Source: Ruditapes philippinarum (Eukaryota). Taken from it: 64,000 nucleotides of DNA. Positions 12,301 through 39,100 of this stretch are shown in pieces. The stretch covers positions 124,001-188,000 of the forward strand of contig NW_026865718.1 of NCBI RefSeq assembly GCF_026571515.1, given 5' to 3'. How positions within the stretch are numbered: position 1 is the stretch's first letter; every line of letters begins with the position of its first letter. Below the pieces are notes generated by a model that worked only from the letters and a program-made list of their open reading frames with translations, did not search any database and had not been told where the DNA came from. A program made the position numbers and the translations under genes.

Positions 12301-13471
12301 GCACAAATACCATAGGTAACTAGTAACTTAACATGAATTTCCCTGGTAAAGAGTAACATTACAGGAATACCCAAGGTAAAAAGTAACTAAATTTATATCC
12401 CAGGTAAATAGTTACTTTGCACAAATACTCCAGGTGAACAGTAACTTAACATGAATATCACAGGTAAATAGTAGCATTACACTTACACTACAGATAAAAT
12501 TGTTGAATTGTTTGAATTGTAATTGAAAATCATGAACTGTTACAGCATTGTTATAGAATATCCCAAACCTATTAACTGAAACTGTAAATGTAGTCATAAA
12601 ATAAAAAGTTCATATTTAGTCCTCTATATATTAAATATTCATAAGTACAATTTTGTTTACATATACATATATGTCCTTAAATTATTCACAACAAATTATT
12701 TCAGGTAAAGCATGTTCCTCTCATTGATATTTTCAGGCAATTATAGATGCAGTCTATTATTGATTAAATGATGTTTGCTAACTGTCTAATTTCCATACAT
12801 TACAGATAGATAAAGTGGAGATTACTCTACCAAACAAGCATTACTTTGATATAGATTTCTCCAGATTTCCCAAACTTGAGTTTAGTGGCTGCAATAACAC
12901 TCAAGTAAGTTGTGTTTGGTTTTTTAATGCGGGGAAAAATATAGCATTGTACTTGTTCTTTTTAATACTGTTTCTCTTACATGGACTATGTTTTGAAGTG
13001 TTACCAACATGTTATTCTTATATAAGATTGAATATGGGGCATCTGTGGCTGAGTGATTAAACTACTTGCCCTTCACTGTTGTGGGTTCGAATGTCAACAG
13101 GGACTTTGGATTCTTTCATGTGAGGAAGCTATCCAGCTAGCTTATGGAACGTAAGTGGTTCTACTCAGGTGCCCATTAGTGCAAGTAAAGCAGGAAGGAC
13201 CTACACTGTGTTGGTGTTATGTAAAACCCTACCAAAATAAAAAGGGTGAAAATTATATTATGCTTGCCATATGGGCTGAATATGGTCAGTTCTCTCTAAG
13301 CTGAAAGCAAATATTTGAATAACAGCATGTTAACTTGATATTGTAGGATACATATATAAACATATGTATATTGTATCTGTTTTATTATATTTTAAGGTGT
13401 ATATGGCCGTTGACAAACCCTCTGGAAATATCCATGCTGTTGTACAGAGGAGCAAAACTTCCAAATTGTAG
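6278..13471 (+). CDS. UOX: Urate oxidase (uricase), 8 coding exons: 6278-6379, 7932-8057, 8774-8890, 9829-9907, 10602-10788, 11308-11431, 12806-12904, 13397-13471 (909 nt, 302 aa)
   Basis: Manually spliced at GT-AG junctions with consistent phases. Uricase motifs YGK, IIATDSQKNTV, EEYPW, LRVLKTTQSAF, TLP..DDRI, YSASVQNTLY, LPNKHYF and DKPSGNI are present, and the protein ends in the peroxisomal PTS1 SKL-stop. Confidence 0.96.
6690..7820. repeat. Minisatellite, about 34-bp unit (ttattcactcaccatggttatcaacttactgtag), in uricase intron 1
   Basis: About 30 tandem units visible. Confidence 0.95.
7932..8057 (+). CDS. UOX: Uricase coding exon 2 (ELEVCTALTL...IIATDSQKNTVHVLAKQHG)
   Basis: tttacag acceptor, GTATGT donor, catalytic TD motif. 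Confidence 0.95.
8124..8456. repeat. Minisatellite, about 29-bp unit (gatatgttatatggctcataaagacatt), in uricase intron 2
   Basis: Tandem units visible. Confidence 0.85.
8774..8890 (+). CDS. UOX: Uricase coding exon 3 (VKNIEKFALILSNHFLRKYPHV...EEYPWKRVDI)
   Basis: tttcag acceptor, GTAAGT donor, 39 codons in phase 0. Confidence 0.93.
9029..9193 (+). mobile_element. 5'-truncated degenerate SINE copy in uricase intron 3
   Basis: ttcatgtggg..tatccagctagcttatg...ttcttcctc...aagcttgaaagtc..catatga...tgtgttggtgc plus (caa)n tail. Confidence 0.6.
9829..9907 (+). CDS. UOX: Uricase coding exon 4 (NGEKHVHAFQFVRDCLRVCEVTQKRG)
   Basis: tttcag acceptor, GTAACA donor, HVHAF motif. Confidence 0.92.
10602..10788 (+). 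CDS. UOX: Uricase coding exon 5 (EPLVRAGIRDLRVLKTTQSAF...DDRIMST...FDKA)
   Basis: Lies within ORF 10556-10801; uricase signature LKTTQSxF; AG/GT boundaries in phases 1 and 2. Confidence 0.96.
11308..11431 (+). CDS. UOX: Uricase coding exon 6 (EAVKATILEKFAGPPDTGVYSASVQNTLY...TRIPQ)
   Basis: FAGP..GVYSxSVQxTLY motif; donor CAG|GTAAAT at 11431/11432. Confidence 0.93.
11415..12480 (+). repeat. 30-bp minisatellite (ttacacaaataccccagGTAAATAGtaact) derived from the uricase exon 6/intron 6 junction
   Basis: The first unit is the true exon end plus donor; about 35 units follow. Confidence 0.95.
12806..12904 (+). CDS. UOX: Uricase coding exon 7 (IDKVEITLPNKHYFDIDFSRFPKLEFSGCNNTQ)
   Basis: PNKHYF motif with catalytic His; tacag acceptor and GTAAGT donor. 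Confidence 0.94.
13037..13243 (+). mobile_element. Degenerate copy of the same SINE family in uricase intron 7
   Basis: gtggctgagtgattaa (A-box), gggttcgaat (B-box), tgtgaggaagctatccagctagcttatggaa...gtggttctactcaggtgccc, A-rich tail. Confidence 0.8.
13397..13471 (+). CDS. UOX: Uricase last coding exon (VYMAVDKPSGNIHAVVQRSKTSKL*)
   Basis: DxPxGxI motif; PTS1 SKL then TAG. Confidence 0.93.
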   Translation: MYMAVDKPSGNIHAVVQRSKTSKL

Positions 13472-15547: not shown

Positions 15548-17021
15548 TATACCCGGGAATGTATTAATAAAATTAGATAAGTAAAAATTTTAATTGACTT
15601 AAACAGCTAATAGTGACACATATAAATTCTTAATTGTTGGCGGGTTAGTTCTGCAGTACAATTTTATTTTTCTATGATTTACTGAGGGGAAAAAACTGTG
15701 ATAATTTTGCTAACATTAATGCCAGAATATAAACAAAGCCAGGTCATAGCTTTTTGTTTGTCTTTTTTATTGTTGATAGTTTTTCATCCTGTTTTGGCAT
15801 TCAGTTTAAATTTCAACATCAAAACAGGGTTGTATGTTTTTAAAGTAAGTCTAGTCAACATAGCTTTTATTCTTATTGAAGACCATTTACCTCATGAAAT
15901 GTTACTTAAAGTTATGGTAACTGCAAATGAATCTTTGTTACAAGGTGTCCTATTTTATGATGTGTTGTCTTAGTGCAGTAATGAGTTTCATCACATGCCC
16001 GTGCCGCTTTTGCACAGCCACGAGGTGATGCCATTTGCGTTATACAAAAATAGTATAAAGTTGCGCTAAATTTTAGCGTTATACTATAGGTGCATCGATG
16101 AAAAATGACTCTTTCTCACTTAAACAGCCTTTACTCTTGGTATGTGATGAAAAGAATATTAAATTTGTGAATGTTTATTACTGAATTTATTGAACTCGCT
16201 GAATAAAATAATATCCTGCTCACCAGAGCCTCACACAATATAATTTTATTCAACTCGTTCAATAAATTCAGTATTGAACTTACACTCATTCAATATCGTC
16301 TATATCTTATATTAAATATTAATAGGAGTTAACCTATTACTGCACATGTGCATGATTGTCCTATAATTATGTAATGCAAATTTACTAAATACTTGCCTTG
16401 CTGTTAATACATAGTTTTTAAAAATATGTTTATTAATTAATAAGTTTGAGGTGTTATGAATTATTTAAAATCTTTTTGCGTCAAAATTGACTTAACAACT
16501 GTTTCTTGAAAAAACTTGGAAGATATTCAAAGAAAAAATCTCTAAAAGTCACGAAAAACTTTGCTGTAATGGTGCTTTGTGACATACAGGTATTGCAATT
16601 TTGTGAACTGTTTATGTGTATATGGCATGTTTTCTTGATTGAATGCAATGTTATCATAAATATAATTACATGAACAAAGACAGTGTTATTTTGTTTTCCT
16701 TAAAATATGAGGTAGAAGCTGTCCCCTTGGTTAAATCTCTGAATTTATGAAATCGGCTCAATTAAAACTTTTAAACATTTGTCAACTTCGTAGTATAAAC
16801 GGGCAAGTGCACTTAGAGCTGAGGACTGGACTATCTCAGCTCTGATATTTGAAAATAAATTTTTCTAAAAGTACATAAAGTGATTCATTATAAAAGTAAT
16901 TTTCATGTACATGTATTGCATTGATGCATACTTGTACATTGTTATCATTGTTATTCTCTTTTTAATTTTGAATATTCCTTATGATGTTATATAATTATGA
17001 CTCCAAACACAGTGTTATTAA

Positions 17022-17338
17022 AGCTGCATTCCTCCAGATTTGCCGAAATATTTTTAAAAATCAAACTCGTGAAAAATGTACTACAATTACATAAAAAGTA
17101 AAAGGATTCAAGTTATAATTTACATGTTATGTGCGATTAAGAACTGATTTGCAGTATTTATTATCATGTTTCTATAGCATGACTCTGGCCATAAGGACAT
17201 TGTTTTGCATATTTTGACCGCATTTGGTTATTTACATTGGATTGTAAGTGCTGTTTGCAATGTGTAAATAAGTGTCTTTGTTCACTTCACAATATTTTAC
17301 TTTTTAAATAATCAGCAGGAATCTTGAAGCATGCGGCT
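17022..17338. mobile_element. TTAA-flanked MITE, family X copy 2
   Basis: TTAA|agctgcattcctccagatt ... aatcttgaagcatgcggct|TTAA; shares aatcaaact.gtgaaaaat and ataatttacatgttatg with 1901-2272. Confidence 0.72.
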
Positions 17339-18122
17339 TTAACTTCAGAAAAATGATCTGAACAGTATGGGTGTTTATCACATACTTGTGTCAATTTTAT
17401 GACTTCGTAAAAAATGGTATTGCACAGTTGTGCATATATTTAGAGTTGACGTCATGTGCATTTTATCCTGTCACTTGGTTCAATTTCGACCCGATAACAA
17501 GGTGCCGTATATTTTTACTGATCTACGGCACTTGATCACGTGGTATGCATGTTTGCCGGACTACTTTTCAAGAAAAATATAAAAACTGTCGTTAAATCTT
17601 CTGTGTGGAGAATAACGAGTTTTGGAAACGTTGATAAAACTTTGTTTGTTTATTTTATTTCACTCTATAATTTTTCAAGCGAAATAAAAATTATTAAAAG
17701 TGAAAAAAATGTAAAACTTAACTCGTTTGCGACATTAAAATAGCGTACTTGATTTGATTGTTTTGCACGTGCTGTTTGGCGCTACATTGTGACGTCACGT
17801 AAACAATACTTTAAACGTCTGTACAGCGTTAACGACTGAATAAAAAATATTGGTGTTCGGATTCATTTTCTTAGTTAGACCATTTTCTTTCTTTCTAGAT
17901 AGTTTTCACAACAAAATTCGACAAAAAATTGTGTTTATTTATCACATTTTTCAAACAAAATGGCGCCCTCAATGTGAAAATACACAGGGAGATAATAAGA
18001 ACGGCGAGTACATTGTTGTAGAAAAATTAGAGCCTTCTTTGTTTATATAGAAACATTTCCGATAGTGAGATTAAAGGAAGTTCGCTTAATAAAATTCTTT
18101 AAAAAAACGGTGACAGGATAAG

Positions 18123-22336: not shown

Positions 22337-24405
22337 GTAAGCACGCCCCTCGGACACAGAAGATAAATACTAATCTCTACATGTGTCTGTGTTTATTTCG
22401 GATTAGAATTTATGCCCGAAAGTTGATTCTACATAGAAACATGAATTTTCCCAAACAGAACTGCATCGTATTTCAATACTTCATGTAGTTATGAATATGA
22501 TTTTGAAAATTAAAAAAAAAAATTGTACAGCCCGATCAATGTTAAATACTTGATATATAAAGAATGCTTTCGGTAAATAAGCAACCTTTCAACTCCGCGT
22601 TAAAGTTAAAAATATTACACGGGCTTGCCCATCTTTCAACCCGTCATTTTTTTAAAGGAAATTGCAAAATTCACGGATCGTATAGCGAACAGCGCAGACA
22701 AAGATTAGACGGCACAAATGTGCAAGTTAACCTTAGTCTGCACTGGTCGCATGGGCAGGCTATGGGATTAAAATAGTTCATTCGAAGTGTTTCTTAAAAG
22801 TTTTTATCAGTTCTCTTGTTCAGCACTTTTCCTTCCCATGAGAAATAATTTAGTCCATATTTATTCAGTACAATTTTATCTTTTCGATCTCATTAAAATA
22901 TAGTCAAATGGGTAATGTATTCACTTTAAATATTCCATCCAGCAAAATATTCCATCCAGCAAAATATTTCTTCAGTTTCATGAACGTGTTCTAATCGGTT
23001 CTCCTTAATATATATCAAAGTGCTGCAGCACTGAATGCGACGGACATGCAACCGGAGAGACACCAAGGCTTCTTTTAGAAAAACAAAACAAAACAAAAAC
23101 AAAACACAAAATATATAACAGAGAAAAATTTGTTCCATACAAGTTCGAGATTTGTAGAGCAAAAAATTTTGTGTCCCAAATTGATATAATTCAGATTTTC
23201 TACTTTCAAGCACTTAAATACAGAATGAAATTTATGCCTAAAAACTCTGGTCAAACTTGTAAATCAGTGTCCTAATCGATTTATTCTAAGAAATGATATG
23301 TAAATAGAAAAAAAACTATCAACGAAATATTTCTAGAATAAATCCAGGCAAATAAACTTCAAACATAATACATTGTACATTTGAGAATGCTATTTAGAAT
23401 TGCTTCGTGTTTTATCATAGTGGGCATACAGACAATAAAATATAAGTCATTTGTATTTTTATTTCTCTTGGATATGTCTCATTAAAAAAAATTGGTTAAA
23501 ATCATCAGCAATTAATAGTGTATTTCTTAGATTTTTTTATTTACAAGGTAAAGATGTAGAGGCCAGAGCACATCGTTTTTATTTTAATTTAAATGTCACT
23601 TAAGCACTACAGTGTTTACTTGTCCTTTTCAACTTCACACTAAATTCCATTTTCAACTTGTTTGCTTCTTACAATTGTATAGCATTTCTAAAAGTATTGC
23701 ATTACAATCCGCTGGTTTATTAATTACTATTAATGTGTACTTCCTAATCGCCTGTCCAAAAATCAGAACAGGTAAAGCAGAATCTATTTTTAGAATATCG
23801 AAGGTTAACTCATATCATGACCTAGTAAAATATGTAAACAAACCACGAGAATCGGAAGTAGAACTGATATTATAACTTCCTTACCATGATTTCAAGACTA
23901 CATGGCGGTAAAGTGTCTTACATGCATTTTCAAAAATAGATATTTATACTAGCCATTGAACTGTATCTAATATATTAATAACTGCTGAATATTCAGCTAA
24001 ACCCGCGGTATGAGTCACGAAAATAGTTCTTCTTTTATTAATGCGCGAGTTATCCTAGAGTCACGAAAAACTTTTGATTTGTTAATAATAATGTTTTGTA
24101 TAATGTAGAAATATTTATTTCCTACTAATAATGTCATGGAACTCAGAGGTTACACCTTTATTGTAGTATAATTTGCTGTCCTACTTTTTCGACAGCGGTA
24201 AATCGTTTCAGCAGTAATTTGCATATTGCGCAATAATACTACAAGACTACAACGTTTTTATCAATAATATACGTTCATATTTTAACTTGGATAACTTAAT
24301 TTGAAATTGAAAAGGCTAGATATGGAAGACATTAAGATATCCAGACAAAGTATGGGAGTTTTGAAGGATCAAATTCATGTACTATTTCTTGGGCTGTTAA
24401 TTGGT

Positions 24406-25668
24406 TTAGGACACATTGCGCGAGTGTAGCCAACGAAATCCCATGTGTAGATGACTTAGCTCTGAACGCGCCTGAGGGCGCGTCCGTCGCAAAAATTGGA
24501 ATATTCCATTCCATTCCTTGGCCCCGCCCAAACACTGCAAAAGCTCGAGATTAGGCACGAGCATTTTCATCTCAGCGGCAGAAGTTAGTATAGGGGTGTG
24601 TCCAAGAATGATAATAACTCCACCCTTTTTCAAGCATTCAGTAAGAGGCTTGAGAAAGATGGAAGATATTTCTGTTTTAACTACTTCCGAGTTGATGAAA
24701 CGAATAAAAACAACATCTACGCTCCGTGCAGGTATTTTCGGCTCAAGGGCATTTGCACAGTAAATTTCGTCAACCCGTTTCGTTGCAAATTTGACCATAT
24801 GTGCGCTTAAATCGCTGCCAATTGTGTAACTCTCTGGAAGCGCTTGCTTCATCGTCCATAGGAATTGGCCAGTGGAGCATGCGCAGTCGAACAGACGTAG
24901 ATCCTTTCGTCCAAGTGACCTCAAGTAACGTATTGTAAACTCTCGAATATATACTTCACCCTCTCCTAGCGAGAGAGCCAGTTTTTCGTCTATCTCCCAT
25001 CCTTCTTCGGGTGCCTGAATTTCCTCTTTGGCCTGTCCTATCAGTGCCGGAAATGGAAAGGTTAATTCGTAATTGGACATTCCGGACTCAAGAATTTCAT
25101 TCATCAGACAAATCTTCTCGCCGGAAGTCATCTCATTGTAGAAAACCACATACCCACTTTCCATTGTCCTTTGATCCACAAGTCTTCCCAGAAACATACT
25201 CGGCGTAACGTGACTGCAGTGCAGTTCCCGGATTTTATTGCGAACATACTGATGCGACAAGATCCTTCGCCCTACAATAACTCTGTCGCAATTATTTGAT
25301 CTTAATAGGAACACACTTTGAGGCAAGTCATCGCGATTTTCAAAGTACTTCTGAATTTTTCTTCCGGCAACTTTATTCCAATCAATACCACCGTCTGCTT
25401 TTGTTCCTTCCGGTATTGCACGCGCTTGATACATTTCTACTTCCGCTAGAATGAGCTTAAGATTTCTTACGTCATGGTCGTCATTTGAATGATCGAAAGC
25501 ACTTGTAAGTAAATTCTTTGCATCATCCCACTTATTCTCAGAGATAAGTTTCTGCGACTCATAAAGTTTTTCCCGCGATATTTTCGAATGCACATCACGA
25601 AAAACGCCATTAAAATTGAAAGTTGTGTCACCTTCGCTGGCAGTCGGTAAACTTTTTTGTTCTGCCAT
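24406..25668 (-). CDS. Intronless class I SAM-dependent transferase, isonocardicin-synthase (Nat)-like / methyltransferase-fold protein, about 420 aa
   Basis: SAM motif I variant LFDCACSTGQFL, motif II IGSDLSAHMV, VDVVFIRF and LKKGGVIIILGHTP. First ATG at 25668 in aaaATGG context (the ORF track starts at an upstream TTG). The Nat-like resemblance is from recalled motif pattern only. Confidence 0.8.
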   Translation of the reverse strand: MAEQKSLPTASEGDTTFNFNGVFRDVHSKISREKLYESQKLISENKWDDAKNLLTSAFDHSNDDHDVRNLKLILAEVEMYQARAIPEGTKADGGIDWNKVAGRKIQKYFENRDDLPQSVFLLRSNNCDRVIVGRRILSHQYVRNKIRELHCSHVTPSMFLGRLVDQRTMESGYVVFYNEMTSGEKICLMNEILESGMSNYELTFPFPALIGQAKEEIQAPEEGWEIDEKLALSLGEGEVYIREFTIRYLRSLGRKDLRLFDCACSTGQFLWTMKQALPESYTIGSDLSAHMVKFATKRVDEIYCANALEPKIPARSVDVVFIRFINSEVVKTEISSIFLKPLTECLKKGGVIIILGHTPILTSAAEMKMLVPNLELLQCLGGAKEWNGIFQFLRRTRPQARSELSHLHMGFRWLHSRNVS

Positions 25669-25720
25669 TTTTACTTCAGATGTGAAATTCAAATGAAAAT
25701 GGACGTAAAATTGTGGTCAG

Positions 25721-25728
25721 TTTATATA
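25721..25728 (-). promoter_or_regulatory. Candidate TATA box (TATATAAA) of the SAM-transferase gene
   Basis: + strand tttatata reads TATATAAA on -, about 55 nt upstream of the ATG. Confidence 0.5.
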
Positions 25729-28700
25729 TGACCTATCAGAGGGTCAAACGTAAATAGCAACGTTCCAATTTCTAGATTATTTGCTTACTACATTGATAAA
25801 GTATGATATGTCGACTTCATAATTATTATCTTAAGTTTGACCAAGTCATAGTATTATGTTATCATAGTTACCAACTGAAATATTTATTCATTTTACTCTA
25901 GCAGGGCAATGTTCAAGACCGAGTCTATGATTCGGATTGATAGCGGATTTATGTGCATCTCTGTAGTATAGATATTTGATCTTAGTTTGTTTCACAGACA
26001 AAATATTGTACAAGCTTAATAGCGAAGAATGTACGTGTTATGATAATATACAAATACAATTTGAGTTCAAATATTTTCATAATCTTTAAAATTAAAATGA
26101 GTCAACGCAAGTTTTGATCAAATCCAGTACATGCTTCATTGTCAGCTTTTTGAGATAACCACAAATACCGGTTGGAATGACGGGATGTCGAAAAATTGTC
26201 CAACATGGATGGCAAAATGTATTTAAACACGACTTCATAAGTGGAAAACCTACTTCTTGGTACATTAGGAATGCCTTCTGTCACGGAAGTGTTCTTTATA
26301 AAGGAAAGAAAAAAATTGTTACATTTTAATGTTAGAACTGGAGAGCCTAATCAGTGTTCAATTCAGCCCGACATCCTCCTGTTCATACCTTAAAATCCCC
26401 GGTCTACTATCTGCCTACATGATGGTGTAGCAGGTACACGACTGCCTATCATTGTCTGACGAAGACTGAGAATGGCAAAACGGTGTCGATCTTAGGTTCG
26501 AGCGTGGATGGCCGGGCATGGTATTGCTGTGAAGATCTCTATAGACATTTAGTTTCAAGGTGAGTAGAACACGTGTCTAGCGCACGCTGACAGAACGCAA
26601 TATAGCACCGTGAAAGCTACGTAACATAGTCTTTATCGTCATGACGCCGCACATGGACAAAGCCCTTTTAAGAGATAGCTCGACAAATTCCCCTGAGAAA
26701 AGACAGACGGATACTCGCATATACCTACTCATTCATTTAACCATTTAATGGTACATTTATAATTTGGCAAGACCGAATATCTCAATTCATGCCAAGAAAT
26801 TTGTAAAATTTTGAACAAGAAAGATCTTGACATACTGTTCCAGACAGGCCAATCAGCTATCAGATGAAAACAGATTTTCAGGATATTTATTTCTTTCATC
26901 AAAACGCACCTATACACTCTCTTAACTGCAACATTTTTGGCAACATAAATCATTTAGCTATTGAAAATTAAAATGCCTTTAGTCAATGATGTAGTGATAG
27001 TCTCGCGGATAATGTTATATCAAGAGAGACAACTCTTCCAAGCTTACTCAATTTATATCACCCCTTTTACCAAGGGAGACAATTCTTCCAAGCTTATCTA
27101 ATGTCACTCTATTTTGACGTTGTAATTGTATCACCCGTTTTACCAAGAGGGACAACTCTTCCAAGTTTACTTAATCTCGCTGTTGTACCACTTAGGAAAG
27201 CATACAGTGTAGTCGTATGCTATAATTGCTCTATTTATAATAATTGCACAATAATAATAGTAATTATAACAGGTTTGGTGTACGTTTTATAATTACCACG
27301 TGTATGTCTCACGGATCGAATGCCTACCAGTTGACGTGTACAAACATAACAGATGGCTGGCTGCCTGGAAGTAAAGTTTGAGCTGATACTGTTGTATACG
27401 GTTATAACTTTTCAGAGCACAATGCTTTGGCAGTAGACGATTTGTTTATGCGCGCGCATAGAACAATTTCAGTCATGGGGCAAACATCTACCGGAAATAT
27501 GGACAGACATATACCGGGGCTCAGTAGTGGTAGCCGGTAGGTTAGTCCGTCAGTCCCATAATGTACCTCAATGAACATTCAATTTGATCATTTTGTTGTG
27601 TTGATTTTTCTGTACTTCCAGAGAAAAAACATCATTCACTCTTGATTTGTTCAATCAATTACTTTAGATTTGTTAATTTCAATCCGTTATATAAATAGAT
27701 CACTTGGCTCAGTGTTATGAGGAATGAATTATATGCCAGATAGCAGGTCCGTTGCAGATTCGAATCCCGATTGTAAGCTAGGTAACACCAATTTCATGAT
27801 GTATAAAATAAACTCTGTTATCGGGCAACAACACTATAAATGAACATAGACAGATGGTGGTACAACCCATGCATAAAATAGAAAAACTGTTTGTTAAAAA
27901 TTGTATTTTTTCTTCAATTCTTTAAATGTTAATTAAATGATATTCTAAATGCATTACTTTTTTACTGACATTCTTTCTATATATATTTGTTCATACAACT
28001 GTCAAATATAGGTTAACACAAACATATAAAACCAGTATAATCAAATATATGTAAATAATATTAAGGGTTTAAAATGTATGTACAGCTATTATACAAAATG
28101 TATATTCAAATGAAACAAAAAACAGGTAGCTAAAATTAATTTCAATAATTCATCACAAAACTTACACTTTCTCCAAATTCACCAAATAACGACAATAGTC
28201 ATATCATGTTGAAAACTAGGTTTGTACAAATATAAAAAGACAGTCAGTGCATAATAAAACTTGAACATTTTTTGTATGTGCAAGGCTAAAAAAGGCTTGC
28301 TTAGTTTCTACATCTTGAAATGACGTCATTTATAAACAAAATTATAAATATAAACAAAAACTAAACAAAATAGATAAATCATTTAGTCAATTGATATAAT
28401 TCAAATAAATGAGAAATAAAGGACAAAATTTGTTAACATCAGATAAGATACTGCTACTGCATTCAAAACAAGACCAGTATATCCTCTAAAATAACGACCA
28501 AAGGGCTCATTTTACCGTGACGTTTCACATTTTGTATCTCATTTTATGACAAGCTTTCAACAATACAAAAAACAATAAACTCAAAACGTAATATCCCAAA
28601 TTAAACATGACATGTTTAACCTGACTCATTTTATCAACCGATGTTTTAATTTATCTATACAACATGTACACATGTTCAATTACAAAAAAAAAATTTGAAC

Positions 28701-33193: not shown

Positions 33194-36100
33194 CTATAAC
33201 ATTATTTCCGGTTGATGGAGTATGGACGTGTTTGGTGTACTCATGTCCGGGCCTTCGTCATCGAAGACATCTAGTTCGTGAAACAAATCCGGGTCTCTGA
33301 TCCATTCTATTTCCGGTTCCGCTTCTGGCATGATCACGCACATAAATCTTCTTCCGGTTCGATTGTCCGTTGGATAAATTATCAAAGGACTGAAATGCTT
33401 TGCATCAGACACAAAATCAATGAGTTTGTTGTATATATCCGGAAACTGATGCCTCAAGCTCACACCACGATTTCTTAATTTACGCTGAATGTTCACAAAG
33501 CACAGTTCCCGCGTTTTTCTGTCGTCTGATTCATTCGCGTGCTGATTCCCGGGAACAGCAGTTAAAATCAATGTGGACGGACTGTCAGTATCCTCCTGTT
33601 TTGGATGCATGTGAGCCGGGCTCAATCTCAGTTTGGCACATTTCTGAATAATAGACTCCATTCTACGCGGCATGGGCTTCACGGGAAGCTTTGGCGGTAT
33701 CACAATTGCCACATGTATCACATATTTAAGTTCCGGATTGTATTGTTTGCACGTTTCAGTAAGTATTCCAAGCTTTGAACCTAACATTTTCGCGTGCGGT
33801 AGCTCTTTCAAGCATATGTACACAGGAGGTACCCATAAACTCTCAATACCGTAAATCAAGAAATCTTCCGAAGAACTGATGTCCGGAAATGCGAACACAA
33901 CACAACCACGACCTTGTGATAAGTAGCCACGACGAGCTATCCTAGAGCATTGATACTGAAGATGAGGTTGTTTGTTAATGTATTTAATCACATGTTTACA
34001 CGCACTATTAATTCGACTATAAATACACACGCGTTTGTGCGACTCCCAATGAAGTTTTCTACAATTCCGACTACAGTAATACGAGAAACAACTGTGGCAT
34101 GTCTTAAAGAATTGTTTGGCTTCTTTAAGATTCGTTTCGCGTTTACACGACGTGTATTCACATTTTACTAGATTATATTCCGCATTTTCATCACTAACTT
34201 CGTTTCCATTTTCACAAACACTAGAATTATACTCACGCGCACTAAGATTAAGAGACAGTCCAGGAGGGGTATCTGGGGAAAAGACAAAATCATCGGGTGT
34301 TCTCGGAACTATTCGCCCATTTTCGTCAATTCTCATTCTGCCAGTTCGATGACCATCCAAAAGAAGCAACCCGTCTAATATTTCATCAACTGATGCGTCA
34401 CCGCGAAGCTTGTTTTCGAGATAACCATTCGATACATTGTCAGCATGAGCGTTTGTGAGAATCACATGAAGATCCGGAGACCCGTCCATCGCCAGGTCGC
34501 CATTTTGGTTGGAATGTCTGCCCAAGGCCATTACGGGAAAGCTGAAGGTTCTATCTTGCAACTCGTTAAGCTGTTCAGCAAAACCATTCTCCAAAATGCT
34601 GCTATACCGTCGTTTCTGTAAAAATTCAAACAAAGTTTCACCATCAGTTTTTGTTTTAAGTTCAAGAGCATGCAACCATGGTGGAAATTTAACTGGAAGT
34701 TCACTATTTACCTCAATGTCAGCATTTCTAGCGATATTCTTACCTTTTTTATTCTGAGAACTCGTGTCACTTGAGGCCGCTGCCGGAGAAGCAAAACGGC
34801 CAGGTCTCCTAAATCTAAACTGAGGCAGGGAGGCTCTTAGGCTCTGAGGCTTTTTAACGGTACGAGAACTGGTGCTCGAACTTGTGTTCGAAGCACTGCC
34901 ATTTTGGCGTAAAGTGTTTGTATTTTGCTCTTGGGATCTACTCACATGATTTTCATCCGAGAAATGAACTTGTGTCCGTCTTGGCGCATGCGCACTAGTT
35001 TCACTATGTTTCACACTATGATCGGTTAATATAGGTTTGCGTTCTGGAACAGGTGGGGGTGGGGATATAGTCCTATTATTCTGAACAGGTTTGTCATCAC
35101 TAAATCTGTCTGTAACAGTTTCTTTTGTAGGCGTAGGGGGGTCAAATCTTACGTTGGATGAAGGTTTCTCCTTTGTGGGACTTGTGACAGGAGATTTACC
35201 GTCCGATGGACTAGATGCCTTACTTTTGGCGTCATTTTGCGCTTTCTTTTCAAACATTTCGCGAAGTTTTGCGAACGGTACAATTGCTATAGGCTTAAGA
35301 TTGTCTTTCTTTTCTTTTTTCCTAAATATATCGCTAGGTAACTGAGGAGTGTTATGAATAGGCGCTTTCTCCGGCGTAGTCGGCAACAACGGGGCACGGA
35401 GAAGCCGTGCTGCTGGGGAGATAGAACTAGTTGGGGTAACGCGCTTTTGGATGATAACTGTATTAGACTGGGGGGTTACGGACGGCGAAGGGGAGGTGGT
35501 CAAAGAGGGAGGATAGGCAGTCGACCCTACAGTGGAAGTCGAACCAGTCCTGGCATATGTAAACAAACTTTGAGTACTGCCACTTCGCGAAAATGACGAC
35601 TTTCTAAACCAGTCTGGGACATTTAATTTCGAAAGTGATTTAGAAACTCGAAGTTCGTGTTCTGACGGGGTTCTAGACAGTTGCCCAGGCTGTGCTGTAT
35701 CGTCAAACACGTCATCTAAATTAGTTTCTAAAGTTTGTAAACTTTTAGACTTTGGAACCTTTCTATTTGCAAACCGTCCTTTACCAGGTTTCCTAGGCAA
35801 CCGGTGACTCTCACTTGGTCCTGTAATCGCACTCATGCTTGCAGCCCTTTCCAGAGGATACTGAAACGAAAGATAATAAGGATCTTGTAAGGACTGTCCA
35901 TGTGCGTTGACGTCATCAGTGACGTCGGCGTCAATATCCGTTTCAGTTGCGAGAGACGATATCGATCCGTACCGTAAAAGCTGCTCAAACATATTTTCGA
36001 GAGATTCTTTCGTATGACGGATTTCTTCGCGTTTATGATGGGAAAACATACAATTTGCATGCAATTTATCGTAATCGGCTTTTTCGTAAGATGAGTTTGC

Positions 36101-39100
36101 ACTGCTATATCGCGAACCGTAAAGCTCTTCAATATGACGGGGTGACGGGAGGGAATGGTAATTATCCATGCTTGTATTACTTCCGTAGGTCATATTCCAA
36201 GACGCCATGTCTGATGGCAAACTTTCTGTAGATTGCTGATGAATTTCGTGACGTTTCAAGTATTTCCTTGGAGTAGAGGCTAAAGATGTTCTATGCTGTA
36301 AGAACTTATCTTCAAAACTTCCGTTTGATAGATTTTCAGCACTTAGAAACCTTTCCCGCGATTTCAATACTTTCAATCTTGAAATAGACGGTTTCTTGTG
36401 TTGAGATTCAAACGTGATATTCACTCGTTCATTTGTAACCGGTTGTTGCAGGATAGATGTGTATTTCTTTAAATTATGCTTAAAAACTTTCCGTTTCACT
36501 CCTTTCAATTCCTTTGATCTAGATAGAAGATCGGAAGGTTTAGTCGCCGGTGACCGGACGACACGTGACGTCACTTCCGAGTCACTCAATCCTCTTATTC
36601 GGGCAGCATTGTATGTATCTTGTAGACTGTGAAAACTTTCTTCTAAACTGTTTAAAGAGTCATCATCCGAAACTAGGGAACAAGACCCAATAGAATCTAA
36701 TTGCTCATCTTTATAATTATCATTCTCTAATTTCACATTATCTGTATGTTCAATAATTTTCAATTCCACGTCATTTATGTCACACTCCTCTTCACTTTTT
36801 AACAAGCTATCGTCAATTTGTATTCCAAGTTTTGAAATATATTCAGTTTTATTCGGCAAGCTTGTGCTACTCGGCTCTTCTAATGAAGAAATGTCACTGC
36901 GTTTGTAATTATATCTATCATCTATGCCTGGAGAATGTCCAACTTGCGTATTTTGTTTGACATTATTTAAATTTTCTGATTTTGGCAACGAATCACTGAC
37001 ATTCTGATCTTTAAAATCCAATTGACTAGCTTTTAAATTGTTTTGTAATGGTGTACTATTGTCTTTTACAATGTTATTTGGTGACAAAATTGATTCTATA
37101 CTTTCAGTAGCATTGTTACAAAATCCGACATTTTGCTGATCATTATTTTCTACACTTTTATTATAAGTAACGTTCTTATCTGCTTTATCTTTATATTTTT
37201 GATCGTTAGTATTGGATTTTTCAGGTTCTTCATAGATTTTTCGATAATTGGGTCCGATTTTATGCTGAGGCGGTGTTGTTTTGTCCTGAAATTCTTTTGT
37301 ATCTTTATAAATCTTATCTGAACAATTATCTATATTGTTATCGCTGTTCAAAATCTCTCTATCATGTACATTGTCCGTTTGCCTCGGATCATTAGATTTA
37401 TGAATTCTATCCCCTATGCTCAATGTCAAACTATTGTCTTTTTCAGATTTAAATTGATCGGAAATATTTTCCGGTTGAACACCTTCAGGGTGGTCAGCTG
37501 ACAACTGTAGGTCTCTAGACTTATCTACTTTTATTGCACTTTCTGAGGTAAGAACACTCCCAACTGGACGCGCATGCGTATTACTTTGACTAGAATTTCG
37601 AGGCAAATCGCTTTCAAATAAATTGTCTACAAACGTTTCATAAGAAAGGCTATTATTTTGCTTAAAGTCATCACTTTCTAATGAACTGTTTTTTTGGTCA
37701 TTATCATTAATAGTCCCTGTCTCATTTATATTAACAGAATTTAAATCATTCAATAAGTCATCAACAGACGTTTCAAGGTTCGATTTCTGTTTTGCTCTTT
37801 TCTGTTTTTGACTATCTACACCTACACTGTCAATAATATCATCAATATTAGTTTCACGTCTTGACGTCCACTCTTCTTTCAATGGTGTAGAATGAACGGG
37901 AATATGTGATGTCACTGTTACTTGTTTCTCAAATATATCATCAATGTTTGTTTCTATGTGTGATTTAGATGGTGTTATTGTCCTACGACTTGATTTTCTT
38001 GCTGGTTTTCTAATGTCTTTATTATCTTCATTAATTTCACTTAAAACATCATCAATATTTGTCTCAATACTTGAATTTGACCTAGTTTTTAAATCATTGA
38101 CAGACTCACTTTCAAATATATTATCAATATTAGTCTCTTTTTTCACTCGTTTACCTATCTTTGCATCATTATCTGTGCGATGTTTTGTTTTTGATAAACT
38201 TTCATCATCAAGTTCGTCATCTATAGAAGTTTCCAGTCGATTTTCTTTCAAACTTTCATTTACTGAATCAACATTATTTTTAATATTTTGTTGACCTTTA
38301 TTGTCTAATCCATGATGTTTACTTAATCCAGTATCATCTGCAAGTCTGTCGTTATTGTCAGTATTTTCTGAATTTACGTCACTTAAATCCGCGGCTTTTT
38401 CTGCACTTTTTCTGGTCAAGTATTCAATTTTTTCTGTCAAGCTGCTAAGTGTTTCACCAAGTCCTTCGGGATGTTGTAAATTATTCATTTCTTTCACACT
38501 TAAACTACCCGTTTTATCACCATCTCTATCGATTACAAATTTCTGATCAAGATCTTGTATCAAATAATCTTTATCGATCGCGTTTGGATCTTTATTAAAA
38601 GATGATATATCTTGCTCAGGAAACGGAACATGTTCAGATATCGGACTTAGTTCTGATTGAATAATATACTTTTTAAAGTCAATTTCACCAACAGTGTTTG
38701 TCTGTTTACTTTCATTTTCACTTTCAATGCCTGTTTTTGCGATCGATTTTTCTGCGTCAGCATAACTAGAGAGATTTGGCAATTTTGATGGCGGAGAATA
38801 ATGGTCTTGATTGATTGACAAAGATATTGGTTTTTCTATTTTTTCTTCAGATTTACTTTCTTCGTCTTCAGAAGTTATCGGAGAAAGAGGCCCGTCACTG
38901 CGAGTATCCGAATCTGACAAATTGTTTCTATCTGTGACGTATGATCGTTTTTTAAATTGCGTGCTTATATCTTCTGTGTGTGAAAATTTAAATCCCCTGG
39001 CATCGTCTGGTAATGTATGGGAGATTACTGCATCGCCATATTCTGGAGATAATCCGACAGAGTTCAAGTTCGTGAATGTTTCAAAGTTCCTTAGTTTACC

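What the first reader, a model, noticed from the sequence alone, without database searches (positions are those of the whole stretch)
24406..25668. Intronless, bacterial-type Nat-like (isonocardicin synthase / aminocarboxypropyl transferase) gene embedded in an animal genome
Seen: a single-exon ORF of about 420 aa with a class I SAM fold (FDCACSTGQFL, GSDLS, IRFINSEVV, GGVIIILGHTPIL), a TATA box, a Kozak-like start and downstream AATAAA. It is flanked by host-type MITEs and host genes, so contamination is unlikely. Recalled knowledge: the DxACSTGxFL / RFxNxEVV / GHTPxL pattern, with an upstream GRR...LG.LV...FYNE...FP segment, resembles actinobacterial and proteobacterial proteins annotated as isonocardicin synthase (Nat), which transfer the 3-amino-3-carboxypropyl group of SAM rather than a methyl. 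I do not recognise it as a standard metazoan methyltransferase family. It also has an extra N-terminal helical, TPR-like segment of about 110 aa. Inference: a horizontally acquired, domesticated enzyme that may make an unknown aminocarboxypropylated metabolite in a mollusc.
Basis: partly seen in the sequence, partly recalled or inferred. Interest (0 to 1): 0.8.

Follow-up and report, generated by a model that had tools for sequence, protein, structure and literature searches.

The report
Unclustered clam Nat-like transferase paralogue
This is a real, transcribed, intron-less Manila clam gene of the bacterial isonocardicin-synthase (aminocarboxypropyl transferase) family, whose presence in molluscs and likely ancient bacterial origin were published in 2025. 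This copy is the uncharacterised sister paralogue lying outside the bursatellin gene cluster, and in this assembly a mobile element has cut off its last seven codons.

Summary
The ORF is real (window 24406-25668, minus strand, 420 aa).

- **Genome and family.** The genome is Ruditapes philippinarum. Mollusc Nat-like aminocarboxypropyl transferases (ACT), with a proposed ancient bacterial origin, were published in 2025 as part of the bursatellin/oxazinin (bur-ox) cluster (PMC11869996). One of them was assayed in vitro.
- **Two paralogues.** Molluscs carry two old ACT clades, each found in bivalves and gastropods. Clade B sits beside the FmtATR NRPS in Mytilus, Mizuhopecten and Sinanodonta. In this clam it sits between a P450 and an FMO. 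The window gene is clade A, about 39% identical to clade B, unlinked to the cluster and biochemically untested.
- **Broken 3' end.** The last 28 codons, the stop and the downstream poly(A) signals lie in a 1,478-bp high-copy Helitron2-like element. It is inserted 7 codons before the native stop. Other public runs, including transcript-like contigs, carry the empty site, which encodes a 399-aa protein ending FQFYILRRTD. The insertion is therefore polymorphic.

Verdict: observation partly confirmed, interpretation supported, and the kind is already published. This is a new member of a known kind.

The parts
25721..25728 (-). TATA-like box TATATAAA, 53-60 nt upstream of the start codon
   Evidence: Read directly. 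RNA and transcript-like contigs give no cover above 25643, while DNA runs do, consistent with a transcription start close to the ATG.
24492..25668 (-). Native coding sequence, part 1: codons 1-392 plus the first base of codon 393 (single exon). This is the Nat-type aminocarboxypropyl transferase paralogue 'ACT-A'.
   Evidence: ORF. End-to-end alignment with 399-404-aa mollusc orthologues. PDB 8zhu at E 4e-30. Model pLDDT 91.6 and Foldseek TM 0.88 to 8zhu/8zhv.
25474..25668 (-). Animal-specific N-terminal extension of about 65 residues, containing two of the three predicted N-terminal helices
   Evidence: Bacterial homologues and Nat begin at about residues 65-75 of this protein. The extension is shared with rotifer-type sequences (GIYKKP.N.HL against GVFRDVHSK). 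Helices 29-43 and 47-60. No TPR Pfam hit.
24868..24888 (-). SAM-binding motif I of the family, D-C-A-C-S-T-G (res 261-267)
   Evidence: D261, A263, C264 and G267 are invariant, and S265 and T266 nearly invariant, in 57 family members. The motif aligns with DAACSTG of Nat.
24679..24702 (-). Family motif RFINSEVV (res 323-330)
   Evidence: R323, F324 and N326 are invariant; S327, E328 and V329 are nearly invariant.
24586..24603 (-). Family motif GHTPIL (res 356-361)
   Evidence: P359 and L361 are invariant; G356, H357 and T358 are at least 90% conserved. Identical to GHTPVL in Nat apart from I/V.
23014..24491 (-). 1,478-bp non-autonomous high-copy transposon (Helitron2/Helentron-like) inserted into codon 393
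   Evidence: Copies at 95-99% identity over most or all of the element, with 10,994 first-look candidates. Reads and contigs that skip exactly 23014-24491 with no target duplication. A terminal 10-nt arm GTCCGTCGCA (24482-24491) pairs with the subterminal TGCGACGGAC (23036-23045) (I15). Palindrome GTGCTGCAGCAC near the other end. No ORF over 95 aa inside.
24406..24491 (-). Transposon-encoded tail of the assembly's ORF: the last two bases of codon 393, codons 394-420 and the TAA stop (residues 393-420, LRRTRPQARSELSHLHMGFRWLHSRNVS)
   Evidence: Residues 390-420 match hundreds of places genome-wide. pLDDT drops to 53 and then 45 after residue 400.
22991..23013 (-). Displaced native 3' end: the rest of codon 393 (Y), then I-L-R-R-T-D and the TAG stop
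   Evidence: Frame reading ...YILRRTD*. Sequence. Joined in frame to 24492 in the empty-site contigs and read. Orthologues end FQFYICKRTD, and FQYYV is conserved down to bacteria.
22703..22990 (-). Native 3' untranslated region (at least this far), with an AATAAA near 22861-22866
   Evidence: The 918-nt contig of X15 runs from the ORF through the empty site to 22703 and beyond. Sequence.

Best explanation
**What it is.** The gene is the Ruditapes philippinarum member of 'clade A'. This is one of two ancient mollusc paralogues of the bacterial Nat (isonocardicin synthase) family of SAM-dependent 3-amino-3-carboxypropyl transferases.

**Shown here**
- It shares Nat's whole two-domain fold and every family-invariant residue.
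- It is a single-exon gene integrated in clam DNA, and it is transcribed at a low level.
- It has been inherited vertically since before bivalves and gastropods split.
- It is not the cluster gene. The ACT next to the FmtATR NRPS, P450 and FMO (the bur-ox cluster, whose Mytilus ACT was shown in vitro to make tyrosinol O-homoserine ethers) is clade B. In this clam, clade B lies on another contig.
- In the assembled haplotype a 1,478-bp Helitron2-like element landed in codon 393. It replaces the conserved C-terminal YILRRTD with 28 transposon-encoded residues and gives the mRNA a foreign 3' end. Other individuals carry the intact 399-aa allele.

**Inferred**
- The enzyme binds SAM in the Rossmann domain and transfers the aminocarboxypropyl group, releasing methylthioadenosine, to a hydroxyl of a small aromatic metabolite. 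The acceptor is probably a tyrosine-derived compound, related to but not necessarily identical with the clade B substrate.
- The ancestor came from a bacterial NRPS-plus-ACT cassette. It was duplicated early in molluscs, and clade A dispersed away from the cluster.
For: **Family membership**
- 8zhu at E 4e-30, residues 147-391.
- model pLDDT 91.6; 8zhu/8zhv at TM 0.88 and E 2e-27, against 3.5e-9 for the next fold.
- invariant D261, A263, C264, G267, R323, F324, N326, P359, L361, W224 and E238 are all present.

**Host integration and expression**
- a host repeat lies inside the ORF.
- DNA contigs of two studies cover the ORF and its upstream flank.
- RNA raw reads (X23) at depth 0-4 across 24553-25642 and none above 25643.
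- an X15 contig at depth 27 joins the ORF to the native 3' UTR.

**Species**
- P0060 is 100% identical to the clade B copy on contig C4160 and is named R. philippinarum.

**Two clades, each with bivalves and gastropods**
- clade A supported at 99, clade B at 98-99, and A+B together at 86-98.

**The cluster gene is clade B**
- M. galloprovincialis NRPS VDI72206.1 next to clade B VDI72207.1 on one 627,705-bp contig.
- M. edulis CAG2199363.1 and CAG2199366.1 flank clade B CAG2199365.1.
- Mizuhopecten OWF45614.1 and OWF45616.1; Sinanodonta locus tags _036132 and _036135.
- clade A lies on other contigs or chromosomes (VDI70785.1, OWF39958.1, Dreissena, M. trossulus).
- in this clam the order on C4160 is P450 (10.3-14.9 kb), ACT-B (16.27-17.48 kb), FMO (20.3-23.3 kb).
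- the FmtATR NRPS is on C2246.
- the window holds no P450, FMO or NRPS exon.

**Insertion polymorphism**
- the joint 23013->24492 appears in X15, X1 and one X23 read. An X2 contig enters the element.

**Published biochemistry of the sister clade, and oxazinin-1 in Manila clam**
- PMC11869996.

**Bacterial cassette**
- 27 of 80 bacterial loci have an A-domain gene in the 6-kb flank of the ACT, mostly just upstream.
- L053 carries A-T-R then ACT. L052 carries an A-T-R-ACT fusion plus a CmlA-like hydroxylase and a formyltransferase.
- the animal clades group with these NRPS-linked bacterial ACTs at support 97.
Against: - No assay exists for any clade A protein. The chemistry (aminocarboxypropyl against methyl transfer) cannot be read from sequence, and no paper on the determinants in the Nat structure was found in the held library.
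- Clade A and clade B differ at only nine positions that are each at least 90% fixed within a clade, and none lies in the catalytic motifs. A different substrate is therefore not indicated by sequence.
- Expression evidence is thin: a few reads from 4% of one RNA run, and contigs of a run whose RNA status is only guessed.
- That McalACT itself is clade B is inferred from the paper's statement that the assayed enzyme is the clustered gene, plus linkage in three other Mytilus species. The M. californianus accession was not available.
- The trees are quick-search, unrooted and flagged for composition heterogeneity. The direction of transfer rests on taxonomic breadth.
- Bacterial homologues with the highest pairwise identity (gut Bacillota, Cardinium) lack an adjacent NRPS.
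Confidence: 0.75

Rival explanations
1. The window gene does the same job as the cluster ACT. It would be a second isozyme that O-aminocarboxypropylates N-formyl-tyrosinol in the bursatellin/oxazinin pathway, differing only in tissue, timing or regulation. No new metabolite would be involved.
For: All catalytic and family-invariant residues are shared. Only nine clade-discriminating positions exist, none in the motifs. McalACT is reported to be promiscuous towards N-acyl tyrosinols and thioesters. Manila clam contains oxazinin-1.
Against: The two clades have been kept apart at about 38-40% identity in both bivalves and gastropods since before those classes split. That is unusual for pure redundancy. 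Clade A is unlinked to the cluster in every species checked.
Confidence: 0.3
2. In this assembly's haplotype the gene is a fresh pseudogene. The transposon insertion removes the conserved C-terminal strand residues and the native 3' UTR, so this allele makes little or no active enzyme.
For: The insertion falls inside the last predicted beta-strand (388-396). It removes Y393, which is conserved in at least 90% of 57 family members down to bacteria. The only ORF-to-3'UTR transcript evidence laid (one X15 contig of a run only guessed to be RNA, and one X23 read) is of the empty-site allele. No full-length annotated R. philippinarum protein for this locus appeared among 5.8 billion proteins, whereas the clade B copy is annotated.
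Against: 392 of 399 native residues and every catalytic motif are intact. By chance the transposon-encoded tail starts LRRT, resembling the native ...LRRTD shifted by two residues, and the model keeps the strand at pLDDT above 90. Transcripts of the insertion allele cannot be told apart from other copies of the repeat, so their absence is not shown.
Confidence: 0.35
3. The protein has reverted to, or always was, an ordinary methyltransferase, or has another SAM-dependent activity. The Nat resemblance would reflect fold only.
For: Pfam and NCBIfam see only generic methyltransferase domains. The PMC11869996 authors state that ACT activity cannot be easily predicted from sequence.
Against: Similarity to Nat covers both domains, is 18 or more orders of magnitude better than to any methyltransferase, and includes the family-specific motifs. 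Both biochemically tested members of this family, Nat and the Mytilus ACT, transfer the aminocarboxypropyl group.
Confidence: 0.08
4. The ORF is bacterial contamination or a mis-assembly, not a clam gene.
For: It is intron-less and its non-animal relatives are bacterial.
Against: A host repeat with thousands of copies is inserted in it. It sits 148 kb into a contig with host genes and retroelements. Independent runs of several studies hold it with its flanks. Orthologues in about 15 mollusc genomes follow the species tree. GC is 0.39, against 0.29-0.36 for most of the window.
Confidence: 0.01

Closest known systems
Isonocardicin synthase Nat (Nocardia uniformis nocardicin pathway; PDB 8zhu/8zhv)
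   Same: Same two-domain fold across all of Nat (TM 0.88; about 300 aligned columns). Same motifs (D.ACSTG.FL, R..N..VV, GHTP.L, C-terminal FQ). Sequence E-value 4e-30. Nat transfers the 3-amino-3-carboxypropyl group of SAM to a phenolic oxygen, as stated in PMC11869996.
   Different: About 28% identity. The clam protein has an extra helical N-terminus of about 65 aa. It is an animal nuclear gene with a TATA box, not part of a bacterial operon. Its substrate is unknown.
bur-ox aminocarboxypropyl transferase (McalACT type; mollusc 'clade B'), Venugopalan & Schmidt, JACS 2025, PMC11869996
   Same: Same family, same length (397-401 aa), same N-terminal extension, same invariant residues. Both are intron-less and both occur in bivalves and gastropods. 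The two clades are each other's closest relatives.
   Different: Only 38-40% identical. The window gene belongs to the sister clade A, is not adjacent to FmtATR, P450 or FMO in any species checked, and has never been assayed. The paper's main text does not mention paralogues.
Bacterial NRPS-linked Nat-like ACTs (for example loci L053, L052, L062; Streptomyces, Kutzneria, Xenorhabdus, Burkholderia, Rickettsiella, Legionellaceae)
   Same: They group with the animal clades at support 97. They are encoded next to, or fused with, an A-T-R NRPS module like the mollusc FmtATR. In L052 a formyltransferase and a beta-hydroxylase are also present.
   Different: 26-38% identity. They lack the first 65 or so residues. 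They are operon genes, and their products are unknown.
Other aminocarboxypropyl transferases (nicotianamine synthase/CntL, MccD, BtaA, TYW2, TapT)
   Same: Same formal chemistry with SAM, as listed in PMC11869996.
   Different: None of these appeared in the PDB sequence search up to E = 10 or among the listed fold matches. The paper notes a lack of pairwise sequence identity among the few characterised ACTs.
Helitron2/Helentron-type non-autonomous elements (own knowledge of the class)
   Same: Insertion without target duplication at a T-rich site. A 5' terminal sequence forms an inverted repeat with a subterminal 3' sequence, followed by a short hairpin. Very high copy number.
   Different: No Rep/helicase ORF in this copy. 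The family was not compared with any curated repeat library, so the class assignment is provisional.

Membership tests
Nat / isonocardicin-synthase-type aminocarboxypropyl transferases | Significant sequence similarity to Nat across the catalytic domain and the preceding alpha/beta domain | tested here: met
   phmmer against PDB: 8zhu_A at E 4.3e-30, query 147-391 against chain 82-319; next hit at 3e-3.
Nat / isonocardicin-synthase-type aminocarboxypropyl transferases | Same three-dimensional fold as the solved Nat structures | tested here: met
   AlphaFold2 model at pLDDT 91.6 and pTM 0.89. Foldseek gives 8zhu/8zhv at E 2e-27 to 3e-26, target TM 0.86-0.89, about 300 columns. The best non-Nat hit is at 3.5e-9.
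Nat / isonocardicin-synthase-type aminocarboxypropyl transferases | Family-invariant residues (D-x-A-C-S-T-G-x-F-L, R-F-x-N-S-E-V, G-H-T-P-x-L, W224, E238, R242, F390-Q391) | tested here: met
   All are present in the window protein. 20 columns are invariant and 32 more are at least 90% conserved over 57 sequences from molluscs, rotifers and bacteria.
Nat / isonocardicin-synthase-type aminocarboxypropyl transferases | Transfers the 3-amino-3-carboxypropyl group of SAM (methylthioadenosine released) rather than methyl | not testable with these tools
   Needs an enzyme assay. It has been shown only for Nat and for the Mytilus cluster ACT (PMC11869996).
bur-ox cluster ACT orthogroup (McalACT type, clade B) | Falls in the same orthologous clade as the cluster ACT | tested here: not met
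   The window protein falls in clade A (support 99). The clam's other copy on C4160 falls in clade B with the Mytilus, Mizuhopecten and Sinanodonta cluster genes.
bur-ox cluster ACT orthogroup (McalACT type, clade B) | Physically linked to the FmtATR NRPS and/or the soluble P450 and FMO genes | tested here: not met
   tblastn of the clam's P450, FMO and NRPS pieces finds nothing in the 64-kb window. Clade A genes are on other contigs or chromosomes than FmtATR in M. galloprovincialis, M. edulis, M. trossulus, Mizuhopecten and Dreissena.
bur-ox cluster ACT orthogroup (McalACT type, clade B) | O-aminocarboxypropylation of N-formyl-tyrosinol | not testable with these tools
   Biochemical assay required.
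Horizontally acquired bacterial gene fixed in an animal lineage | Physically integrated in host chromosomal DNA | tested here: met
   A host high-copy transposon lies inside the ORF. The gene sits 148 kb into contig C14205. Contigs from independent runs span the ORF and its flanks.
Horizontally acquired bacterial gene fixed in an animal lineage | Patchy animal distribution with broad bacterial distribution | tested here: met
   Named animal hits are molluscs plus Rotaria socialis only. There are 101 confirmed bacterial loci across Actinomycetota, Pseudomonadota, Bacillota, Bacteroidota, Chlamydiota, Bdellovibrionota, Cyanobacteriota and CPR. Many database hits are unnamed, so absence elsewhere in animals is not proven.
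Horizontally acquired bacterial gene fixed in an animal lineage | Animal sequences nested inside bacterial diversity in a rooted tree | tested here: inconclusive
   Animal clades group with NRPS-linked bacterial ACTs (support 97), with other bacterial groups outside. However, the trees are unrooted, quick-search and compositionally heterogeneous.
Helitron2/Helentron-like non-autonomous transposon (the inserted element) | Insertion without target-site duplication | tested here: met
   The empty-site joint 23013->24492 skips exactly 1,478 nt with only 1 nt of ambiguity.
Helitron2/Helentron-like non-autonomous transposon (the inserted element) | Asymmetric terminal inverted repeat plus a hairpin near one end | tested here: met
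   10-nt perfect arms at 24482-24491 (terminal) and 23036-23045 (22 nt from the other end) (I15). Palindrome GTGCTGCAGCAC between that arm and the end.
Helitron2/Helentron-like non-autonomous transposon (the inserted element) | Similarity to a Rep/helicase-encoding autonomous partner or to a curated Helitron family | not tested
   No repeat library was available. This copy has no ORF above 95 aa.

The most novel reading that the evidence does not exclude
Clade A is not a spare copy of the bursatellin enzyme. It would be a second, functionally distinct aminocarboxypropyl transferase kept across bivalves and gastropods for roughly half a billion years. It would act on a different acceptor, or at a different step, and so mark an undiscovered class or branch of homoserine-ether (or nitrile) metabolites in molluscs. 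The clam insertion/empty-site polymorphism would then be a natural knock-down for finding that product.
Probability: 0.4. Interest if true: 0.55.

Novelty: new member of a known kind. Interest (0 to 1): 0.38.

Why it matters
Animal-encoded natural-product pathways of bacterial origin are rare. The mollusc bur-ox pathway is one of the few with biochemistry behind it.

- **A second enzyme to test.** Every checked mollusc lineage keeps a second ACT, unlinked to the cluster and untested. The published pathway may therefore be incomplete, or molluscs may run a second aminocarboxypropylation reaction. This gives a concrete enzyme to assay.
- **A natural variant.** The polymorphic transposon insertion in Manila clam, a farmed food species in which oxazinin-1 was detected, offers a natural allele to correlate with metabolite levels.
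- **Origin of the pathway.** Bacterial operons pair or fuse an A-T-R NRPS with the same kind of ACT. One also carries a formyltransferase and a beta-hydroxylase. This suggests the core of the mollusc pathway arrived as a single cassette.

None of this overturns current knowledge. The central claim of the finding is already in the literature.

Tried and rejected
- **Contamination:** rejected, because a host transposon lies inside the gene and reads link it to its flanks.
- **bur-ox cluster inside the window:** rejected. tblastn with the clam's own P450, FMO and NRPS pieces finds nothing in 64 kb. The whole-genome Pfam scans listed no match on C14205.
- **Window gene as orthologue of the assayed Mytilus enzyme:** rejected on tree position and on accession and contig adjacency.
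- **TPR repeat in the N-terminus:** no Pfam support. Only weak feature-based Atlas neighbours, obtained with the Dreissena orthologue.
- **Clade-specific active-site differences:** only nine discriminating sites, none in the motifs, so no substrate prediction was possible.
- **McalACT accession or paralogue discussion:** not in the main text or the preprint, and no supplements are held.
- **Paper on the Nat crystal structure:** none found in the library.
- **Mollusc synteny from metagenome contigs:** only three loci were returned. Two short contigs (one clade A, one clade B) had no neighbouring genes.
- **Tools unavailable or skipped:** The Atlas could not take the window protein itself. The search of protein representatives was not used, because it carries no names and could not settle taxonomic distribution.
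- **Restrictions:** No spliced model was needed, since the gene is a single exon. The intact 399-aa protein was not typed or folded, because it would be a joined sequence. The 420-aa assembly ORF was folded instead.
Full report
**1. Observation**

The ORF listing gives one long ORF on the minus strand, 24406-25692. The ATG at 25668 is the start used by all orthologues, giving 420 aa.

TATATAAA lies at 25721-25728, and the start context is AAAATGG. Pfam and NCBIfam report only generic class I methyltransferase domains.

The 3' end is not what it seemed.
- A search of the window's own genome with the protein returned the gene itself, one intact paralogue (C4160, 39% identity) and hundreds of short hits to residues about 390-420 only.
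- DNA comparison shows that window 23014-24491 is one copy of a 1.48-kb repeat. Copies match at 95-99% identity over most or all of its length, and there are 10,994 first-look candidates.
- Orthologues are 399-404 aa and end ...GIFQFY[IV]CxRxD.
- In the window the ORF reads ...GIFQF and then runs into the repeat (LRRTRPQ...RNVS).
- The missing ...YILRRTD-stop lies intact just beyond the repeat, at 23013-22991.

**2. Is the insertion real, and is the gene expressed?**

Reads and contigs of four public runs were laid on 22700-25950 (3,251 letters).
- A joint 23013->24492 that skips exactly 1,478 nt, with no duplicated target, is present in three runs. These are a 918-nt contig of X15 (depth 27, running from the ORF straight into the native tail and 3' UTR), a DNA contig of X1, and one RNA read of X23.
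- A contig of X2 instead continues from the ORF into the repeat, as the assembly does.
- Both alleles therefore exist. The empty-site allele encodes the canonical 399-aa protein.
- RNA raw reads (X23, 4% of the run read) cover 24553-25642 at depth 0-4 and nothing above 25643.
- X15 shows the same limit, while the DNA runs cover the upstream flank.
- This fits a low-level, unspliced transcript that starts close to the ATG.

The element has three structural features:
- a terminal 10-nt arm (24482-24491) that pairs perfectly with a subterminal arm (23036-23045);
- a short palindrome next to that subterminal arm;
- no long ORF.

Together with the lack of a target duplication, I read it as a non-autonomous Helitron2/Helentron-like element. 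This is provisional and rests on my own knowledge of the class.

**3. What the protein is**

- phmmer against all PDB sequences gives 'Isonocardicin synthase' 8zhu at E 4e-30 over residues 147-391. The next hit is at 3e-3.
- An AlphaFold2 model built on 57 homologues has pLDDT 91.6. Foldseek puts the Nat structures 8zhu/8zhv first (E 2e-27, TM 0.88 over all of Nat). METTL6 follows at 3.5e-9.
- Twenty columns are invariant across molluscs, rotifers and bacteria, including D261, A263, C264, G267, R323, F324, N326, P359 and L361. The window protein has all of them.
- The extra N-terminus is about 65 residues, not 110. It is helical and has no TPR family hit.
- The last predicted strand (388-396) spans the insertion point. 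The insertion allele loses Y393, which is conserved in at least 90% of the family, but by chance continues LRRT.

**4. What is already known**

A full-text search for 'isonocardicin synthase' finds Venugopalan & Schmidt, JACS 2025 (PMC11869996). The paper reports the following.
- Bivalves and gastropods carry a 'bur-ox' cluster. It comprises a Fmt-A-T-R NRPS, an isonocardicin-synthase-like ACT, a bacteria-like soluble P450 and animal FMOs.
- Recombinant Mytilus californianus ACT converts N-formyl-tyrosinol and SAM to the O-homoserine ether.
- Outside invertebrates the closest homologues are bacterial, suggesting an ancient HGT that predates the mollusc classes.
- Oxazinin-1 was detected in Manila clam.

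The core of the finding is therefore published.

**5. Which gene is this one?**

The paralogue on C4160 is 100% identical to 'isonocardicin synthase-like [Ruditapes philippinarum]', which identifies the genome.

Trees of the hits resolve two mollusc clades.
- Clade A contains the window gene, Dreissena, Potamilus, Pinctada, Mizuhopecten, Mytilus, and the gastropods Batillaria and Pomacea.
- Clade B contains the C4160 gene, Sinanodonta, Potamilus, Tegillarca, scallops, Crassostrea, Mytilus and Haliotis.
- Each clade mirrors the species tree, and each is the other's closest relative.

In this clam, clade B lies between a multi-exon P450 without an N-terminal anchor and an FMO, at C4160 10-23 kb. 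The FmtATR NRPS is a 1,642-aa open frame on C2246. The 64-kb window contains none of these genes.

Accession and contig adjacency settle which clade is 'the' cluster ACT.

| Species | FmtATR NRPS | Clade B ACT | Location |
|---|---|---|---|
| M. galloprovincialis | VDI72206.1 | VDI72207.1 | one 627,705-bp contig |
| M. edulis | CAG2199363.1 and CAG2199366.1 | CAG2199365.1 (lies between them) | one 3,781,092-bp contig |
| M. edulis (RefSeq) | XP_071162172 to XP_071162177 | XP_071162181.1 | same 107,021,180-bp chromosome |
| Mizuhopecten | OWF45614.1 | OWF45616.1 | one 312,184-bp scaffold |
| Sinanodonta | ACJMK2_036132 | ACJMK2_036135 | one 156,443,777-bp contig |

Clade A genes lie on other contigs or chromosomes in M. 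galloprovincialis, M. edulis, M. trossulus, Mizuhopecten and Dreissena.

The window gene is therefore an ancient, unclustered paralogue of the characterised enzyme. The paper's main text does not mention paralogues.

**6. Origin**

- A scan of one genome per bacterial species found 101 loci with relatives, across many phyla.
- In 27 of the 80 loci kept, an NRPS adenylation-domain gene lies in the 6-kb flank of the ACT, mostly just upstream.
- L053 encodes ATP-grasp, A-T-R, ACT, aldo-keto reductase and a PPTase.
- L052 encodes an A-T-R-ACT fusion of 1,204 aa, an MFS transporter, a CmlA-like beta-hydroxylase and a formyltransferase.
- In a tree with named bacterial loci, the mollusc and rotifer clades group with these NRPS-linked bacterial ACTs at support 97.
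- Rotifer-type sequences share the N-terminal extension with the mollusc ones.

I infer that an NRPS-ACT cassette was acquired from a bacterium. The ACT then duplicated before bivalves and gastropods split, and clade A left the cluster. The trees are unrooted quick searches, so the direction of transfer rests mainly on distribution.

**7. Mechanism and confidence**

- Shown: family, fold, invariant residues, host integration, transcription, paralogy, polymorphic insertion.
- Inferred, about 0.6: SAM-dependent aminocarboxypropyl transfer to a hydroxyl of a small aromatic metabolite.
- Open: whether the acceptor is the same as for clade B. Only nine clade-discriminating residues exist, none in the motifs.
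- Open: whether the insertion allele is active.

**8. Limits**

- The paper's supplements are not held.
- The Atlas could not take the window protein.
- Earlier notes of this scan hold nothing on this gene.

**Verdict**

The discovery is already published for the family. What is new is modest: this is the uncharacterised sister paralogue, it carries a polymorphic transposon insertion in its last strand, and bacterial cassettes suggest how the pathway arrived.

Noticed in passing
window 23014-24491 (and more than 10,000 candidate places in G000): A 1.48-kb non-autonomous element with copies at 95-99% identity over most or all of its length. It shows no target duplication, an asymmetric terminal inverted repeat and a hairpin, so it is probably a recently active Helitron2/Helentron-like family in Ruditapes philippinarum. 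It is heavily represented in RNA reads (depth up to about 430 in X23).
   Followed up: partly
G000:C4160:10300-23300 (loci L017, L014): The clam's bur-ox core: a multi-exon P450 with a soluble N-terminus (minus strand), the intron-less clade B ACT (plus strand, 401 aa, 16271-17476) and an FMO (minus strand). A short duplicated fragment of the ACT lies just downstream, at C4160:17782-17994.
   Followed up: partly
G000:C2246:119147-124075 (L019 4148-9076, minus strand): The Fmt-A-T-R NRPS ('linear gramicidin synthase subunit D-like') is one 1,642-aa open frame. It is on a different 369-kb contig from either ACT, so the cluster is split or loosely linked in this assembly.
   Followed up: partly
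L052 3226-10443; L053 1721-8773; L062 2987-6903: Bacterial operons combine an A-T-R NRPS module with a Nat-like ACT, which is fused into one 1,204-aa protein in L052. L052 also carries a CmlA-like diiron beta-hydroxylase, a formyltransferase and an MFS transporter. This could be a bacterial counterpart of the mollusc bursatellin pathway.
   Followed up: partly
proteins P0142, P0034, P0126, P0130, P0149: Bdellloid rotifer (Rotaria socialis) and rotifer-like sequences of 396-406 aa share the animal-type N-terminal extension and group near the mollusc clades. This points either to an older spiralian acquisition or to a second transfer from a similar donor.
   Followed up: partly
proteins P0386, P0395, P0397 (VDI72214.1, VDI72213.1, VDI72206.1) and P0389, P0392: Mytilus galloprovincialis and M. 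edulis carry several near-identical full-length FmtATR genes on one contig, which suggests tandem duplication of the NRPS.
   Followed up: no
window 33194-41425, minus strand: A single 2,743-aa open frame, serine- and aspartate-rich, with a weak MYND-type zinc finger near the C-terminus (E 5e-4, below Pfam's cut-off). It is a host gene 7.5 kb upstream of the ACT.
   Followed up: partly
window 11281-12374: Overlapping repetitive ORFs on both strands (units such as ...VKLLFTWGI...).
   Followed up: no
protein P0181 (CAG2190258.1, Mytilus edulis): The clade A gene model is 750 aa. The extra 350 or so residues have no Pfam domain, so the model is probably a fusion artefact.
   Followed up: partly
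L026, L030, L035, L042, L048, L054, L056: Many bacterial holders of the family are intracellular symbionts or pathogens of invertebrates and protists: Cardinium, Amoebophilaceae, Chlamydiae, Legionellaceae, Rickettsiella. Legionella species also hold the closest full-length Fmt-A-T-R relatives of the mollusc NRPS (P0316, P0344, P0347).
   Followed up: no
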